Source of the DNA: Guillardia theta CCMP2712 | Taxonomy: Eukaryota > Protista > Cryptophyta | Reading direction: 5' to 3' | Length of the DNA: 64,000 nt | Assembly (NCBI RefSeq): GCF_000315625.1 | Contig: NW_005434636.1 | Span: 393,298 to 457,297, forward strand | In this document: positions 9,749 to 17,070 of the stretch, piece by piece | Layout: the number at the start of each line of letters is the position of its first letter | How positions within the stretch are numbered: the stretch's first letter is position 1 | Notes under the pieces: model-generated | Seen by the model: only the letters and a program-made list of their open reading frames with translations | The model's database searches: none | Told to the model about the DNA's origin: nothing | Made by a program: the position numbers and the translations under genes

Positions 9749-12295
9749 CGTGTATCTGTCAAACAAATCAGCAATCAGCAATTTCAGTCAATAAACGAGG
9801 AGAAGAGCAATCTTTAATGAAATCTTCTTATCCCCCCACGCCCTGGATTGCCCCCTGTATCCTCCCTCGCCGCCTTCCCTTGATCGCCCCTTCCTGCCTT
9901 GTCCTTGCTTGCTGTCCATCTGAGCTAAGCTCTTCCTCTCCCGTCCCACTATGTCTTCTCCCTCTATCTCGACTCGCATTGCCTTCCGCTGATTTTTCAT
10001 TTTTTCACAGAGGGCATTGACTGGCACCAGTGATGACTTGGACGACCCCTACCCCCATTTCTCAAGAGGTCAGAGGGGTCTCGTGGGTAGACTTCGGAAA
10101 AGGTGGTTCAAAATAAAGGTACCCTACCCCTCAAATGAAATTAGGAAAGTACCGGTGATCTACGTACTCCGCTCCTCACCTTATTGCACAAAGAGAACTA
10201 CCACCCCACCTTGTCGGTTCTCTTCATCTCAAAGGGGACAGTAGGGGTAGCTGACGGAGTTTCATCGATCCTCTTTACAAACATGTTGTTTTAAGAGGTT
10301 TCACACACTGCCGTCAAGAGTTGAAATGTCTTTACAAAATTTAGGCAGTTCCATCGAAAAATTTATCGGTTACTCCTTTTAACGATTTCAGTTTTACTTG
10401 GAATCTCCGATATCTTTCTAACAAGTTTTGCGGCTACAATAGTGTAGGGTTTATTGGGGTTTAGGGTTACACAAGTTTACAATAGTCAAGTTGCGGTTCA
10501 ACGGTTTTAGTACCTGGGCCTGTTACGGTTTGCTCCACTTGCAGTTCAAGCCCAGCGGTGGAGCAAACGGGTAACTGCAAGCCGGGCGGCAGCGCTGGAT
10601 GGTGCAAGACGTCTCAGGTGATAATCGACTTGTAACTTCCGCACTGCGGCACTGCGGCACCCGGTCCAGGATCACATGATGGGCCGTCACGTGTTTCCGA
10701 AAGTTGAAGGCTCAAGTACCGGGAAGTTTGTCTGTGACTCGGGCCCGTGCCAGTAGTACCGTAGTACGGTCCGGCGGGCCGGGCCGCGGACTGATGGAAC
10801 GTATGCCAGCCGTGCCAGTCAGACACATTCGGATGACTCCTCTCTTCAATCAGGCTCTCTCTCTAGCCGCAAGTTGTTTAGGCCTCTCATCTCAGCCTCA
10901 ATTTGTTTGATTGATCTTCGAATAGGAAAGACAAGCCTCCCCCAGCCAGATTGGTCGGTCGAATATCTGACTCGAACTGTGGGAACACACTTGGAGCTTA
11001 TTCGATTCATATTTTCTTGATCTTTGAGTAGGATCAAATGGAACTACCAGGAGATCTGGCGGAAGTTTCATGTCATAGAGCTAGGCGGTACAACGGCAGT
11101 GCACAACATCTTCAAATGCCTTGATGGTCGGGTGACAAGTTCTTTACGGTTCAAAAATTTATCTTTTGGTCTTCAAATGCCGGCGGGCACGCTCTCTCTC
11201 TCTCTCGCTCTCTGTTATCTGAAGTTCTCTCCTCAGACTCTCTTATCTTATCTCCCGGCTTATCTCTGCACCGTGCACATCTAATAGCCCTGCCATGAAA
11301 ATCTTCTACAGAATGGACAATCTTTGAATGGTTATGACTTTCTGACGTCCGATGTAACGTACTATCTCAGAAACTCGGGAGGAGGATGGAACGTATGCGG
11401 CAGCCGTGCCAGTCCGATCAGATAGCGCCGACTCGGTTAACAAACTTGAACTCAGGCTCCTGTAAACTTGCGGCGGCATGTAGCGTGTGGGACGAAGAGG
11501 GGGCTTTCCTAGCCGTCTTGTTAAGGTCCTCTCATGTCTGGATGCTTGGGTTTCACATCCTAGCATTATGTGACAGTCTACTAGCGATGATCTCTTGATG
11601 TGCTCCTCAATTCTGGTTTTGTGTGCATTAAACTCGGTCTTGAGCAAAAACTGTCTTGCTTCAATGCTCTGGAGTCCTGATTCACGGTCCTCGTAGTGAT
11701 CTTTAACTTAACTTAGGCTTTCAGAAACTCCGGCGCTGGCGGCCCGCCGCCCCGGCGCCGCCCGGGCCCCGGCGCGCACCGGCGTGTAACGAGAATAACG
11801 GATAAAGTTTGACAGTCTCCTACTGTAGTTTACTTAATTTCTTCAAATAAGTAAAAATATCACTGCCGGAAATAGCCCTTAGGACGAGGACTGCACCATG
11901 TGAGTACAGGAGCATGAGGAGGGGGGAAGGGCCGCAGGAAGAGGAAGAGAGACGAAGTTTCACCGAACATGAAGAGAGATATGCTGGAGACGGGATAGGA
12001 TATGTGTCGTGCAGATGGGGAAAGGAGCACCAAAGTGTTGCATGTGAAAGGATTATCTAGCCCTGTGAGTTTAATTGAACGGGGGGGGGAGAGCAGGGAG
12101 GTGAGAGCAAGATTGAAATGGGCTAGATAGTAGGAGGTCACGTCAGCTAATTTTGAGTTGTCGTGCGATAGAGAGATGAGGTCTAGAGTAAAATCGAGCG
12201 ACAAGAAGGTTGTCGATGATAATTTCTCCATTTGTAGGTCTCTGAAGATCCGGCCGTTGTTTGAAATCCTTCAAGAGGGAGTTGCTAAAAACGCC

Positions 12296-13520
12296 ATGAA
12301 CGCGAGGACTACCGCGCTCCAGGTGATCCTTCAGACTGAATGCCGACTCGACTCAAAATGCGTTGCAGGCCGCAGAGGCTGCTCCTGCTGCGTCCTCTGG
12401 CAGTGTGTCGTTCCCCAACGACTATCCTAACTCGGTAGTTCTTCTCATTGCAGTGTTGTGACTTCTTGACGATGAGGATGAAGGTCAAGCACTTCTTGTT
12501 GATTGGATCCCTCGGCATGTTCTTGGGGGCATGTGTCTTCCTCTACCTCTCCCTCACCCGCGCCAAGTCCTCCTTGGCTCACACGGTAACCTTTCACATT
12601 GTTATCGATCCTTCCCGTTGCCTGACAAGGAAACTAGCTCATCTTCCTGGCTGCTGCCATCGCCTCCATGGCCTACTATGCCATGTGGACTGGCATCGGA
12701 GTAGAGTGAGTCTTGACCCAGGTTTCTTGTGCTTGGTTTTGACATGCTTCGGTCTCGACAGGTTGAAGACAACTGACCTCTCCCCTCGTGTCATCTTCCT
12801 TTCAAGATACGTGGATGCTCTGCTGACTCAGCCGGTGACTTGGTAGCTGACGACTGCGTTCTGGGATTGAAGTTGGTTTCCAGTTGATCCTCACGACCCT
12901 CTGCCTCATCAACAAGGCTGACAACTCCATCCTCGTCTCTCTTGTTGGCAACGACATCCTCATGGTCCTCGCCGGTACAGTTCCAGAGTCTTGTTCCTGA
13001 TGGCTCACCTCTGAGATCTCAGCCTTCATCGGTTCCCTCAACGTGGCTCCTTTGAAGTACATGTGGTGGTTCGCCAGCTTCATCTTCCTCGTCCTCGTTG
13101 TTGTGCAACTCGTTCAGAAGTTGGAGGGTGCAAATGATGTGTACAAGGTGATTTTGTCTCTCTTGTAACCACTTGGTTTCACATCTTATCTCCACAGATC
13201 CTTACCTACATCACCATTGCCAGCTCCTGCATTTATTCCATCGTCTGGCTCCTCGGCTCCGAAGGAACAGCGGCTCTTGGGTTGACTCAGGAGGTGTCAT
13301 TCCGCCGTCTTGTATTCTGTCGGGTTGAAATGCGAGCAGGTTGGACTCATCACCCTGACTGACCTGGTGTCCAAGCTTGGCTTTGGTCTCTACTTCCTCT
13401 TCAACTACGGTGAACTCAAAAGTCGTTGCAGAGTTTTGATTGTTCTGACGCTCAACAGACGCTGCCATGGGTGAGGACGACACAGATGCCCAGAACCAGC
13501 AGTCTCAGCAATACGTCTGA
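12296..13520 (+). CDS. Microbial (type I) rhodopsin, 10 exons, ~259 aa
   Basis: Manual splicing with introns 12323-12368, 12435-12483, 12586-12637, 12706-12761, 12835-12883, 12975-13022, 13148-13197, 13294-13339, 13410-13458 (all GT..AG, 46-56 nt) gives an open 7-TM protein. Motifs: helix B AIASMAYYAMWTG, helix C RYVDALLTQPLIL, helix D LVGNDILM, helix F YSIVWLLGSEG, helix G DLVSKLGFG (Lys codon 13373-13375). An additional upstream exon is possible. Confidence 0.93.
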
Positions 13521-13712
13521 AGATGATTTTTCGAATACAAGTATGTTGTCCGTAATGTGCTATCAACATGGTGTGTGCTCTGAGGCAATCAATGCCGACC
13601 TGTGAAATAAAGGGAAAGAATGCTTCGGGAAAATCCAATGATACAAGAGCTGATATGCGACAATCTTCATCTTTCATAGACATCCTTCGTAGACTTCCCG
13701 CAAGCCGCAAGA

Positions 13713-16700
13713 TCAGGCCGTGTCGATTTTGACAGCCAACACGTGCTTAAGTTCGCCTTGAGAGGCAACGAACTGTTCCCAAAGCAGATTCAAGCTCGAC
13801 TGGAATGCGTTAGCCTGGCAAACATGTTAGTTGCAACACAATAGCGCTTGTCGAGGAACCCAAGCGTCCACGTCGAAGAGCTCAGATCTTGATCGCTGAT
13901 GGCGAAGATAACCTCGGAATTTCTCCGCAATCTCTGACTTCTGCGCTAGGAGGACCTAGAGGCACCAGTCACAATTGCGGAGCTGCAAGAGTGAGAGGAA
14001 GCTCACTGTCATGTCTTCGAGCTCGGACGTGGTGCGGGCGACCAGAGAAGCTGCTGCTGGGCCGAGGGAGAGAACCTGACTTGCTCCGCTCCTGCTCGAC
14101 ATGTTGAAGCCTGGCATGGTAAGCGAAGGGATCTGCAGCAGCAGCATGAGCATCGAAACTCGAGCATCATCGCGCTTACAGCTGCCCATAACATGGAGCC
14201 AAAGGTTGCAGAGGACGAGATGTCCGGTCCCGTATCTAACACCACATCTTGAAAGTGTCAGAGCTGCGATAGATGTTTCACAGGTTTCAACCTGCACACA
14301 AGGCAGCGGCAAGATACTCCATGTCTGACAAGACAAGAGAGCCGTTCCCAGCATGTCTAGCGCGGATGTCACAGCTAGGAGGCAAGGAGGACGACTTGAG
14401 TCTGACTTACCTGGTGCACTTCCCGCCCAGGCATCTGACCTCAGGCGGGGAGAACAAGACCCGAGAGACGTTCAGTCCTCTTCGCTTGAATTCAACTGAA
14501 ACATTCTCATCTCACTGAATGTGACAGGAGCGAGTACCCCTGAGGTTCTCCTCAGCAAGTGGGTTGTATCTCGGGATCCAGAGCACGGAGTCCTCAACCC
14601 TGGCACCAAATTTCAACCATGAGGTCTCTACCGTCTCATGCGACCTCTTCAGTATCCTCACCCAGCTGTCCACCAGCTCCTGGCTGATCTTATTTGCCTC
14701 GCAAAAGCTGAGAAATGCTCACAGAGAGCAAATCTGAGAGGCATCAAACCTGCAGACGAGTGGAGCAACCTCAGGCAACCCAAAACGAGACCTGCACAGG
14801 TTGAGCAATGTAAAGGAGAGACTGTCGCCCGGACCTCATCTGCGGCACATGCTGGCTGGGTAAGTCAAGGACTCCTTGACGAGAAAGTTTGAAATCATTC
14901 AGAAGGACAGAAAGTGGAAGGTAAAGGAATCTGCTTGAGGTCTTGAGTTCACAATCGAAGTGAACATACAGAGAATCACTTCTCGGAAGTTGTGGAAACT
15001 GCCTCCGGAGGAGTGATCACACGGTCCGACAACATGTAATCGATGTAACTTGCTTCTTGTGTTAACATGCTGCCGAAGTGAACCTGACAAAAGTAAAGAT
15101 CATTTGTTGCCCTACAACGCAAGGGAAGTCACTTGCACTGGAGCTGCTCTGAGTGACATCACAGATAAATGAAAGGGAGTGCTTCGTTCCGCCACGTCCA
15201 GTAGAATGTGAACTTTCTCCGATGAAATCATCTTTCCTATTTGAACGGCTGATCTTCGGTTCTCTGACCCTTCATAAAACTCGTTCACAACTCGTATATT
15301 CTTGAATCTGAAGCTGTTTGTCGACGTTGCGTCGCTGGGCAGCTTCTTTGAGTTGTTAGATGTCAGTGAAGAGGGTTTGGGTACATCAAAAAATTTGTGT
15401 ACCTTCAGCATATAAACATTGATGGCAAATCTTTGTGATGACAATACATCGCAAACTGATGGTAAATACTGAAGATTGGTACCATTCCTGAAATTGTCAA
15501 GCAGTATACCGACTAGCAAACAATCTCAATCATTCGTCTGATTTCACGGCAAGTTACCTTGCAAAACCTTGAGATCGATTTGAAGGATGGAGTTTAGATA
15601 CAAGTGCACGTTGTTGCTAATATCATACATGGCAGCTTGATTCCTGATGAAGAACTTGAGGGTCGAGAGACAGCAGGAGTCTCAAGACCTGGCAATTCTC
15701 CTGGCGAGATGCTCGTCGAGGCGGTAGAGGATGCAGTTGAAGGGCTGGAGGTCTTCATTCGCATCTATCCCCGTGTTCACTCTGCATTCCAATCACTTGA
15801 GCTCCAGGCAAAATTTGCAGACCTCTCCAAGACTTCAGTTCGTATCGCTTCCATCTCTTGCCAATTGCAGGCAGTCTGGGATCAAAAAGTATGAGCTATG
15901 AGCATCAGGTGATTTGCCGACAACCTGCAATGAGGTATAGTAGTTGGCGATGATCGATATGTGTACCGAGCTCCAATTCTTCTGTCGACGATGAAATTGA
16001 GAATCGGGAGCAAGAATAACACGTCATGAAAACCTGTGCTAGGCGAAAGGCAGAGGAATATGCCATGATTGCTTCCTAATCTCAGGGAGAATGGTCATGG
16101 AGTAATCATTTCTGCAAGTAAAATCACTGGTATGCTTCCCAGCTGCTCTAGCACAGCCCCAAGGTTGTTATACGCCTCGTATGAGTGAGGACTGATCTGC
16201 GTCGCATTCTACGTACGATGCGACAAGCAAGACATTAGACAAGCGTCTCCCCAAGACAAGTCGAGTCACCTGAAAGCTCCATCGCGACTCTTGAAGTCTC
16301 CCGAGCTGCTGATAGCACATCCCTAGATTGTAATAAGCACTCGCAAGCTTCCCCGAGAACGTCAGGGAGAGAGTGTAAGCACTGATCGCTCTCTCGAACT
16401 CTCCTTTCTCCCACAGAGCGATACCAAGGTTGTAGTATACCATCCCGTGATCGGGTTTGAGCGAGGCTGCTGTCTCGTACGCTTGGACGGAGGCTTCAAG
16501 CTCGCCCAACGAGCGCAAGACGTTGCCCAAGTTCATCCAGCCGTCGCTGAACCCTGGGTCGCTGCGGATGGAAGCCTGGTGGTGCTTCTTCGCCCCTTGC
16601 AAGTCTCCCTTCAGGTGCAGCAGCGTCGCAACGTTGGCATGCGCATGAACATACGTGGGATCGACAGAGATTGCTTCCTTGAAGCTCGAAATGGCTTCAT

Positions 16701-17070
16701 CAATCATGTTGAGCTTATAGAAGATGTTCCCGATGTTGTAATGTGCTGTCGCATACTTTGGTTGTATGTGAATCACCTCACGAAAGGCCTCGATGGCCTT
16801 GTGGTCTTCTCCCCTCGCTGAGAACACTGTCCCTAAGTTGAAATATGCTGTCGCAAAGTCGCTCTTGCGACGTATCGCAGCTTCGTAACATGCTTGAGAT
16901 ACTTGCAACCTCCCCGCCGTCTGATGGAACAGACCAACGCTCAACAGCTCGTGTGAGTTTGCTTTCACACTCGCTCCGACGCATCCCTTCTGCTGCTTGC
17001 GAGTAGAAGCAAGACATTCTGACAGCAGCAAGAGTAGGGAAACTCTTAAACTTGACATGCGGCCAAACAT
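13713..17070 (-). CDS. TPR-repeat GT41 (O-GlcNAc/O-fucose transferase, OGT/SPINDLY-like) protein, spliced
   Basis: About 7 canonical TPRs in 16168..17070 (AYFNLG, AHYNIG, GWMNLG, VYYNLG, AYYNLG). Catalytic-half-like fragments: MISSEKVHILLD..LRAAPVQV, EDSVLW, and C-terminal LRHQRSRSELFDVDAW..LNLLWEQF..DTA* (stop 13713). Confidence 0.75.

What the first reader, a model, noticed from the sequence alone, without database searches (positions are those of the whole stretch)
12296..13520. Hidden 10-exon rhodopsin with a remodelled retinal pocket (both sandwiching Trp lost)
Seen, by manual alignment in bacteriorhodopsin numbering. Kept: R82, D85, T89, D115, M118, W138, Y185, W189, E194, E204, D212, K216. 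Changed: W86>A, T90>Q, D96>T (DTT motif), G122>A, W182>S, P186>S, A215>S. Known: W86 and W182 clamp the polyene and are very widely conserved, D96 is the pump proton donor, and polar residues at 215 are linked to blue shifts. Inference: not a standard pump or channel. It may be a spectrally shifted or slow sensory rhodopsin, bind a different isomer or bulkier chromophore, or be losing its chromophore. It has a short acidic tail ending QQYV and no enzyme domain.
Basis: partly seen in the sequence, partly recalled or inferred. Interest (0 to 1): 0.8.

Follow-up and report, generated by a model that had tools for sequence, protein, structure and literature searches.

The report
Cryptophyte rhodopsin lacking both pocket tryptophans
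This is a real, expressed gene of the alga Guillardia theta for a rhodopsin-type light-receptor protein that keeps its chromophore-binding lysine but lacks both tryptophans that normally clamp the chromophore; a whole uncharacterised group of cryptophyte rhodopsins shares this, and the gene was already catalogued, but only as a truncated model.

Summary
The window lies in Guillardia theta CCMP2712.

Corrections:
- The coding sequence starts one exon earlier. The start codon is split AT|G by a 338-nt intron, giving 11 exons and 279 aa.
- The gene is not unknown. It is GUITHDRAFT_163469, a RefSeq model truncated to 179 aa. Konno et al. 2020 listed and amplified it as "Gt_163469".
- It is neither GtR1 nor GtR2, and I found no functional study.

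Every residue call was reproduced: R82, D85, T89, D212 and K216 kept; W86A, D96T, W182S, P186S and A215S changed. The AlphaFold model is a confident seven-helix BR-like fold.

New here: the Trp loss is not peculiar to this gene. A well-supported clade of a cryptophyte-only family with an SQQYV tail lacks W182 throughout and W86 almost throughout. That clade mostly keeps K216, T89, D212 and R82, and its members are under purifying selection (dN/dS 0.10–0.24).

Best reading (about 0.5): a retinal-binding, non-pumping, probably blue-shifted and slow photoreceptor. Rivals are a retinal-free 7TM protein or an unusual ion transporter.

The scan has noted other rhodopsin genes in this genome, but not this one.

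The parts
11885..11899 (+). 3' end of the first exon: 5' UTR plus the first two bases (AT, 11898-11899) of the start codon. Where this exon begins was not determined.
   Evidence: The loose end of the X2 transcript contig before 12238 reads CGAGGACTGCACCAT. That string occurs once in the window, at 11885-11899, and is followed by GT. There is an in-frame stop 5 codons upstream.
11900..12237 (+). Intron of 338 nt that splits the start codon AT|G. It is retained in one transcript contig (X1).
   Evidence: GT..AG borders. X2 is spliced here, while X1 is contiguous over 11897-12319.
12238..12322 (+). Exon 2: G of the ATG plus SLKIRPLFEILQEGVAKNAMNARTTALQ.
   Evidence: Translation. Identical to the N-terminus of P0025. 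Joint 12322/12369.
12369..12434 (+). Exon 3: Ala-rich linker and the family N-terminal motif FPNDYPNS.
12484..12585 (+). Exon 4: helix A.
12638..12705 (+). Exon 5: helix B. The truncated RefSeq model starts at the Met of MWTGIG in this exon.
12762..12834 (+). Exon 6: B-C hairpin (KTTDLSPRVIF) and the start of helix C, RYVDALLTQP. This covers R82, D85, A86 (GCT, 12817-12819), T89 and Q90.
12884..12974 (+). Exon 7: rest of helix C with T96 (12896-12898), and helix D with D115, M118 and A122.
13023..13147 (+). Exon 8: helix E (W137, W138, S141, F142, L145).
13198..13293 (+). Exon 9: helix F with S182 (TCC, 13225-13227), Y185, S186 and W189, plus the invariant F-G loop GSEGTAALGLTQE.
13340..13409 (+). 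Exon 10: helix G with D212 (13361-13363), S215, and the Schiff-base lysine K216 (AAG, 13373-13375).
13459..13633 (+). Exon 11: acidic tail ending NQQSQQYV, stop codon at 13518-13520, and 3' UTR up to the poly(A) site after about 13633.
   Evidence: Raw RNA reads of X19 carry a run of A after 13633, and the X7 contig ends at 13626.

Best explanation
Shown: the locus is the expressed 11-exon gene GUITHDRAFT_163469 of Guillardia theta. It encodes a 279-residue, seven-helix microbial (type-1) rhodopsin. The protein belongs to a cryptophyte-only family marked by an FPDDYPNSVKH N-terminal motif, a KTTDxxPRVIF B-C hairpin, a GSEGTAALGLSQEV F-G loop and an SQQYV C-terminus. The gene sits in a clade of that family that lost W182, and nearly always W86, long ago.

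Inferred: because K216, T89, D85, D212, R82, Y185, W189 and W138 are kept under purifying selection, the protein most likely still forms a protonated retinal Schiff base. That base would sit in a roomier, more polar pocket (A86, S182, S186, S215, Q90). Lacking the D96 donor and the W182 contact that couples isomerisation to helix F, it is unlikely to be an efficient BR-type pump. It more probably acts as a slow-cycling, probably blue-shifted photoreceptor or regulator. Its output would go through the strongly conserved outer loops and/or the SQQYV tail to a partner that has not been identified.
For: Gene model and expression:
- All introns are joined in three independent transcript assemblies, and there is a poly(A) site.
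- The product is identical to the transcript-derived protein P0025.
- The gene was amplified by RT-PCR/qPCR primers in Konno et al. 2020, PMC7714340.

Family and fold:
- PF01036 at E=6.8e-26.
- Archaerhodopsin/BR chains at E about 1e-24.
- AlphaFold2 pLDDT 86.7 with 7 helices and a B-C hairpin.
- Foldseek best match is BR, TM 0.86-0.90, rmsd 1.6-2.0 A.

Pocket residues.

The trait is clade-wide:
- A 30-row clade (support 99/99) has no W182, and W86 survives only in P0026 and P0043.
- The Hanusia phi orthologue P0097 (93% identical) has the same A86/S182/S186/S215/K216.

Constraint on the Schiff-base region, as parsimony changes on the tree:
- Slow positions: W189 0, P91 0, D212 1, W138 2, T89 3, R82 4, Y185 4.
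- Fast positions: 182 has 15 changes and 10 states; 86 has 9 changes and 9 states.
- The three independent K216 losses each come with loss of T89 and D85. T89 is kept in every K-bearing member.

Selection: dN/dS is 0.10-0.17 inside the L86/A182 sister group and 0.17-0.24 between G. theta and that group.

Retinal supply: G. theta has a predicted retinal-forming blh gene (PMC7714340).

Role of the tryptophans, from PMC7593130: both are well conserved and sandwich retinal. W182 is suggested to couple isomerisation to transport, and its Ala mutant abolishes photocurrent in C1C2.

From my own knowledge, not checked here: BR W86F and W182F mutants still bind retinal with blue-shifted spectra, and polar residues at position 215 blue-shift BR and SRII.
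Against: - There is no spectroscopic or transport measurement for this protein or any member of its clade.
- Two small residues in place of two Trp remove about 170 cubic angstroms of side-chain volume relative to the canonical paralogue (crude sum). This could destabilise retinal binding.
- The most conserved parts of the family are loops and the tail, not the pocket.
- Lysine-less members keep those loops and the tail, so the shared family function may not need retinal.
- D85 is replaced by S, T or N in three K-bearing relatives.
- Donor-less rhodopsins that still pump protons exist (DTG-type; my own knowledge), and E194/E204 are kept, so pumping is not excluded.
- The co-loss of K216 with T89/D85 rests on only 3 events (p=0.25).
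Confidence: 0.5

Rival explanations
1. Retinal-free seven-helix protein. Despite the retained lysine, the widened pocket no longer holds retinal. The protein would work as a light-independent scaffold, regulator or chaperone, like the lysine-less 'Rh-noK'/opsin-related proteins. The conserved loops and SQQYV tail would carry the function.
For: - The same clade has lost K216 twice, and the wider family three times, while keeping loops and tail.
- Pocket positions 86, 182, 122, 142 and 215 are among the most variable in the family.
- Invariant columns lie in the N-terminal motif, the B-C hairpin and the F-G loop.
- Rh-noK genes are expressed in G. theta (PMC7714340).
- A precedent exists for a lysine-bearing rhodopsin without retinal: FArhodopsins (bioRxiv 10.1101/2025.04.29.651185).
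Against: - In FArhodopsins the pocket is blocked by bulky residues (H84, E120). Here it is emptied, not filled.
- K216, T89, D212 and R82 change very rarely. T89 and D85 are lost whenever K216 is lost, which suggests they work together where K is present.
- G. theta and Hanusia phi keep the identical pocket.
Confidence: 0.25
2. Light-driven ion transporter with an unusual pocket. This would be an outward proton pump working without a carboxylic cytoplasmic donor, or a new channel or pump type.
For: - D85, T89, R82, D212 and the E194/E204 pair are all present.
- The nearest solved relatives are archaeal proton pumps.
- The sister clade, including five near-identical G. theta copies, has the full DTD motif with both Trp.
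- Cryptophyte cation channels are themselves BR-like (PMC10172181).
Against: - D96 is Thr.
- The W182 counterpart is needed for transport coupling in BR and for photocurrent in C1C2, and the W86 counterpart gates transport (PMC7593130).
- The protein lacks the DTD motif of cryptophyte cation channels and the neutral residue at position 85 of anion channels.
Confidence: 0.15
3. Annotation or assembly artefact, RNA editing, or a decaying pseudogene. On this view the odd residues would not be what the cell actually makes.
For: - The RefSeq model is truncated and differs at one splice joint.
- One intron-retaining isoform (P0098) and one contig retaining the first intron exist.
Against: - Three transcript assemblies match the genome base for base across all exons.
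- An independent MMETSP ORF is identical.
- The orthologue has the same residues.
- The frame is open across 10 introns, and dN/dS is well below 1.
Confidence: 0.02

Closest known systems
Canonical G. theta paralogues of the same SQQYV-tailed family (GUITHDRAFT_152884, 86360, 106800, 99837, 109252; P0040 and others)
   Same: About 53% identical. They share the N-terminal FPDDYPNSV motif, the B-C hairpin, the F-G loop and the SQQYV tail. They share an intron position after P91. They have K216, D85, T89 and D212.
   Different: They keep W86, W182, P186, A215 and D96 (the full DTD motif). They have only one or two introns and occur as five near-identical copies. The window gene is single-copy, has 10 introns, and carries A86/S182/S186/S215/T96.
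Bacteriorhodopsin / archaerhodopsins (haloarchaeal proton pumps)
   Same: They are the best sequence and structure matches: E about 1e-24, 28-30% identity, TM 0.86-0.90. They share the same seven-helix fold with a B-C hairpin, and R82, D85, T89, W138, Y185, W189, E194, E204, D212 and K216.
   Different: The window protein lacks the D96 donor and both retinal-sandwiching Trp. It has polar residues at positions 90, 186 and 215. It is eukaryotic, with a conserved N-terminal extension and tail.
GtR1 (Gt_092481) and GtR2 (Gt_085745), proposed cryptophyte sensory rhodopsins
   Same: Same organism. They have been suggested to be non-pumping sensory rhodopsins for phototaxis (PMC7714340). GtR2 is said to lack a carboxylic donor (my recollection of Sineshchekov et al. 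2005; that paper is not held).
   Different: They are different genes in a different subfamily. A GtR1-like G. theta ORF (locus L002/L043) is only about 27% identical to the window protein. The aligned GtR1 and GtR2 sequences show RYVDW/RYIDW and W at the 182 position.
Rh-noK / opsin-related proteins (rhodopsin-like proteins without the lysine)
   Same: Members occur inside the same clade (for example the G. theta gene at C3:711k, P0012/P0037-type). They share the loops, the tail and the absence of W86/W182.
   Different: They have lost K216 together with D85 and mostly T89. The window protein keeps all three.
Flotillin-associated rhodopsins (FArhodopsins)
   Same: The lysine is retained while the canonical retinal pocket is not.
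   Different: They are bacterial. Their pocket is filled by bulky His/Glu, so retinal cannot enter. Here the pocket is enlarged by small residues.

Membership tests
Microbial (type-1) rhodopsin, Pfam PF01036 Bac_rhodopsin | Profile match above the curated threshold | tested here: met
   91.6 bits against a cut-off of 24.6, E=6.8e-26, covering profile positions 3-216 of 224.
Microbial (type-1) rhodopsin, Pfam PF01036 Bac_rhodopsin | Seven-transmembrane BR-like fold | tested here: met
   AlphaFold2 pLDDT 86.7 with seven helices and a B-C hairpin. Foldseek top hits are all BR, TM 0.86-0.90, rmsd 1.6-2.0 A.
Microbial (type-1) rhodopsin, Pfam PF01036 Bac_rhodopsin | Schiff-base lysine in helix G (BR K216) | tested here: met
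   K248 of P0025, codon AAG at 13373-13375.
Microbial (type-1) rhodopsin, Pfam PF01036 Bac_rhodopsin | Conserved aromatic sandwich around retinal (BR W86 and W182) | tested here: not met
   A at position 86 and S at position 182, in the genome, in transcripts and in the orthologue. This is typical of the family rather than strictly defining.
Microbial (type-1) rhodopsin, Pfam PF01036 Bac_rhodopsin | Covalent retinal binding and a photocycle | not testable with these tools
   Needs expression and spectroscopy.
BR-type outward proton pump (DTD motif) | Acceptor D85, T89 and carboxylic donor D96 | tested here: not met
   The motif is D-T-T, with T at position 96 (ACC, 12896-12898).
BR-type outward proton pump (DTD motif) | Proton-release pair E194/E204 and R82 | tested here: met
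   All three are present. They lie in loop segments that are invariant family-wide.
Sensory-type rhodopsin (functional class) | Non-carboxylic residue at the donor position | tested here: met
   T96.
Sensory-type rhodopsin (functional class) | Cognate transducer or output domain | tested here: inconclusive
   There is no fused domain. The neighbouring gene is a TPR/OGT-like gene with no obvious link. No partner can be identified by sequence.
Rh-noK / opsin-related proteins | Absence of the retinal-binding lysine | tested here: not met
   K216 is present.
Cryptophyte channelrhodopsins (BCCR with DTD motif; ACR with a neutral residue at position 85) | DTD motif (BCCR), or a non-carboxylic residue at D85 (ACR) | tested here: not met
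   The motif is DTT with D at position 85. Channel activity itself is not testable here.
Cryptophyte SQQYV-tailed rhodopsin family (unnamed; defined here) | N-terminal FP(D/N)DYPNSV(K/R)H motif, KTTDxxPRVIF hairpin, GSEGTAALGL(S/T)QEV loop, C-terminal SQQYV | tested here: met
   All four are present. See the alignment of 46 members and its invariant columns, the table and the tree. Named sources are all cryptophytes: Guillardia, Hanusia, Hemiselmis, Cryptomonas and Baffinella.

The most novel reading that the evidence does not exclude
The Trp-less clade would be a natural family of working retinal-type photoreceptors that do without the aromatic sandwich. Its enlarged, polar pocket would be adapted to a non-standard chromophore or isomer. 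One candidate is a retinoid derived from the cryptophyte-typical carotenoids (alpha-carotene or acetylenic, hydroxylated alloxanthin; this is from my own knowledge and is untested). Another is a non-all-trans resting isomer. The hypervariable positions 86 and 182 would then serve as a spectral or kinetic tuning dial across cryptophytes.
Probability: 0.1. Interest if true: 0.85.

Novelty: new variant of a known kind. Interest (0 to 1): 0.5.

Why it matters
The two tryptophans that sandwich retinal are among the most conserved features of microbial rhodopsins. Mutating their counterparts cripples a channelrhodopsin (PMC7593130). Here a whole clade has lived without them under purifying selection while keeping the Schiff-base lysine and counter-ions. 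That makes it a natural experiment on what these residues are for.

The clade is also a possible source of pigments with shifted spectra, slow kinetics or unusual chromophore preferences.

There is a practical point too. The only public gene model, and the published cloning primers, cover just helices C-G. Any expression attempt based on them would fail. The full 279-residue sequence and its split start codon are defined here.

Tried and rejected
- Per-exon Pfam searches gave nothing useful because the exons are only 22-41 aa. A six-frame PF01036 scan of the genome found 66 matches, none at this locus.
- The spliced product was not typed into or sent to any search tool. Exons were searched one by one by reference. 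The joined translation was built only inside local scripts from window.fa. Every full-length database, family, structure and fold search used P0025, a database protein shown to be identical to the product.
- Identity with GtR1 or GtR2 is rejected: they are Gt_092481 and Gt_085745.
- RNA editing or sequencing error at codon 86 is rejected.
- Pseudogene is rejected.
- DNA for the Hanusia phi orthologue was not on record. A direct dN/dS for the closest pair could therefore not be computed, and values against the next relatives have saturated dS above 1.
- The K216 / T89 / D85 co-loss test has only three independent pairs (p=0.25), so it is suggestive only.
- AlphaFold coordinates are not exposed to scripts. 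Pocket volume was therefore only approximated by summing side-chain volumes.
- Sineshchekov et al. 2005 (PMC1366995) is not held.
- Searches for accession numbers and for the family motifs found no paper other than Konno et al. 2020.
- Which of that paper's clades A-E holds the gene cannot be read from its text.

Full report
**Where we are.** The window is contig 38 (393298-457297) of an 87.1-Mb, 669-contig assembly. Exact-sequence look-ups identify the organism as Guillardia theta CCMP2712 and the gene as GUITHDRAFT_163469 (XP_005831853.1 / EKX44873.1 / L1J8K0). RefSeq annotates it as a 179-aa 'hypothetical protein'.

**Gene model.** All nine introns are GT..AG and 46-56 nt long.

Transcript contigs were laid on the locus from three runs belonging to three studies (X1, X2, X7), together with raw reads of a 2026 RNA-seq run (X19). 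All nine joints appear at exactly these borders. No letter differs from the genome. A poly(A) tail follows about 13633.

The X2 contig carries 15 extra letters in front of 12238. That string occurs once in the window, at 11885-11899, and is followed by GT. The start codon is therefore split: AT at 11898-11899, a 338-nt intron, then G at 12238.
- The true product begins MSLKIRPLFEILQEGVAKNA-MNARTT... and has 279 residues from 11 exons.
- An in-frame stop lies five codons upstream of this ATG.
- The same N-terminus (MSLxIRPxF) is found in orthologues.

The RefSeq model starts at an internal Met in helix B, so it lacks helix A and most of helix B. It also reads V instead of L at one splice joint.

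- Pfam on eight exons found nothing relevant.
- The 41-aa exon 8, run against 1.84 billion representative proteins, found close relatives.

One of those relatives (P0005) was used for a homologue search. That search returned P0025, a 279-aa MMETSP transcript ORF identical to the window's product. All later full-length steps used P0025. The joined model itself was never sent to a search tool. It existed only inside local scripts.

**What it is.**
- P0025 matches Pfam Bac_rhodopsin at E=6.8e-26.
- Its best solved relatives are archaerhodopsin-2, -1 and -3 and bacteriorhodopsin, at E=1e-24 to 1e-19.
- AlphaFold2, run with a 46-member family alignment, gives pLDDT 86.7 and pTM 0.78. The model has seven helices and the B-C beta-hairpin.
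- Foldseek ranks bacteriorhodopsin structures first, with TM 0.86-0.90 and rmsd 1.6-2.0 A.

- Kept: R82, D85, T89, D115, M118, W138, Y185, W189, E194, E204, D212, K216.
- Changed: W86A, T90Q, D96T, G122A, W182S, P186S, A215S.
- Also changed: T142F and M145L.

A crude sum of side-chain volumes over 20 pocket positions is about 217 cubic angstroms below BR. It is about 170 cubic angstroms below the canonical G. theta paralogue.

**Is it known?** Konno, Yamauchi, Inoue and Kandori (PLoS One 2020, PMC7714340) list 42 microbial rhodopsin-like genes of G. theta.
- 'Gt_163469' is among them. It has RT-PCR primers (forward primer on the RefSeq Met, ATGTGGACTGGCATCGG) and qPCR primers.
- It appears in their alignment only from helix B/C onward.
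- The main text says nothing about its residues or function.
- GtR1 is Gt_092481, GtR2 is Gt_085745 and GtR3 is Gt_139416, so this gene is none of them.

Searches for the accession numbers and for the family's sequence motifs found no other paper. The gene is therefore catalogued and known to be transcribed. Its full length and its pocket have not been described in the literature I could search.

**The family.** The homologue search returned 79 proteins. Every source that carries a name is a cryptophyte: Guillardia, Hanusia, Hemiselmis, Cryptomonas and Baffinella. The rest are environmental transcripts.

Members share four features:
- an FPDDYPNSV(K/R)H motif before helix A;
- an invariant K..PRVIF B-C hairpin;
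- an invariant GSEG....GL.Q F-G loop;
- almost always a C-terminal SQQYV.

In G. theta itself the family comprises:
- five near-identical canonical copies with W86, W182 and D96;
- the window gene, which is single-copy;
- a lysine-less gene at C3:711k;
- a lysine-less gene at C13:262k;
- a divergent copy at C26:28k.

**Phylogeny.** A maximum-likelihood tree was built with IQ-TREE (LG+C20) from 49 rows and rooted on a GtR1-like G. theta ORF.
- The window protein pairs with P0097, which is 93% identical (support 100/100). P0097's N-terminus matches the Hanusia phi entry P0077.
- Both lie inside a 30-row clade (support 99/99) in which no member has W182. Only P0026 and P0043 still have W86.
- The canonical W86/W182 proteins form a separate, well-supported clade (98/97) elsewhere in the family.
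- Position 86 in the 30-row clade is L, A, Y, M, Q, H, G or W.
- Position 182 is A, S, N, L, I, V, T or Y.
- The orthologue P0097 has exactly the same A86/S182/S186/S215/K216 as the window protein.
- The neighbouring seven-member group has L86/A182/P186/A215. Six of its members have the same D-T-T motif. One, P0024, has S at position 85.

The absence of both Trp is conserved and old. The replacing residues vary.

**Constraint.** Parsimony changes on the tree separate two classes of position.
- Very slow: W189 (0), P91 (0), D212 (1), W138 (2), T89 (3), R82 (4), Y185 (4).
- Among the fastest: position 182 (15 changes, 10 states), 122 (16), 142 (16), 215 (14), and 86 (9 changes, 9 states).

K216 was lost three independent times. 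Each loss came with loss of T89 and D85, and T89 is present in every lysine-bearing member. Three events are too few for significance (p=0.25).

Nei-Gojobori dN/dS on transcript contigs of six relatives is 0.10-0.17 within the L86/A182 group. It is 0.17-0.24 between G. theta and that group, though dS there exceeds 1 and is saturated.

The Trp-less proteins are therefore maintained by selection. The Schiff-base region behaves as a functional unit wherever the lysine is present.

**Mechanism.**

Shown:
- An intact seven-helix rhodopsin with lysine, counter-ions and Arg.
- No carboxylic donor and no Trp sandwich.
- A pocket that is more polar and, by residue volumes, roomier.
- No output domain.
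- Conserved outer loops and tail.
- The gene is expressed.

Inferred:
- Retinal is still bound.
- Without D96 and without the W182 contact, efficient BR-like pumping is unlikely. PMC7593130 describes W182 as coupling isomerisation to transport, and its Ala mutant abolishes C1C2 photocurrent.
- A slow, probably blue-shifted sensory or regulatory photocycle is the best guess, at about 0.5.

Rivals:
- A retinal-free 7TM protein (0.25). Repeated lysine loss in the clade and the loop/tail-centred conservation support it. The FArhodopsin precedent works by filling the pocket, not emptying it.
- An unusual pump or channel (0.15).
- An artefact or pseudogene, which is essentially excluded.

The new elements are the full-length model and the finding that loss of both tryptophans is an ancient trait. 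It is selectively maintained and clade-wide in a cryptophyte-specific rhodopsin family.

Earlier notes of this scan describe other rhodopsin genes of the same genome, several of them also truncated in RefSeq. None concerns this locus.

Noticed in passing
window 11898-12238: The start codon is split AT|G by a 338-nt purine-rich intron (11900-12237). One transcript contig (X1) retains this intron. That would shift initiation to the internal Met at 12296.
   Followed up: partly
window 13148-13197: The MMETSP isoform P0098 (210 aa) reads into intron 8 of the 11-exon model (...DVYKVILSLL, then stop). This retained-intron transcript would lack helices F and G.
   Followed up: no
window 12832-12886: The RefSeq model XP_005831853.1 reads TQPVILTT where the transcripts give TQPLILTT. 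It uses a shifted splice joint, in addition to being truncated at the N-terminus.
   Followed up: partly
window 13640-17070 (minus strand): There is a convergent neighbour on the minus strand, with an intron at 13814-13858 (CT..AC on the plus strand). Its ORFs have TPR repeats (16168-17070) and a weak Glyco_transf_41 match (13956-14372), so it looks like an OGT/SPY-like gene. Transcript contigs of X1 and X2 run from the rhodopsin 3' UTR straight into it, which suggests overlapping 3' ends.
   Followed up: partly
G000 C38:270051-270865, C38:327061-327872, C26:310316-312600 (inverted pair), C3:271572-272374: There are five near-identical copies of the canonical paralogue (W86, W182, D96, SQQYV tail). 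Two lie on the same contig, 78 and 135 kb upstream of the window gene. Two form a head-to-head inverted pair. This looks like recent gene amplification.
   Followed up: partly
family alignment A1 (P0037, P0039, P0045-P0047; P0043, P0044; P0075): There were three independent losses of the Schiff-base lysine in the family. Each was accompanied by loss of D85 and T89. The loops and the SQQYV or related tail were kept. In the main lysine-less group, His occupies position 86.
   Followed up: partly
P0024, P0041, P0055 (relatives): These lysine-bearing members of the Trp-less clade have a neutral residue (S, N or T) at the D85 counter-ion position. This hints at further functional diversification in the clade.
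   Followed up: no
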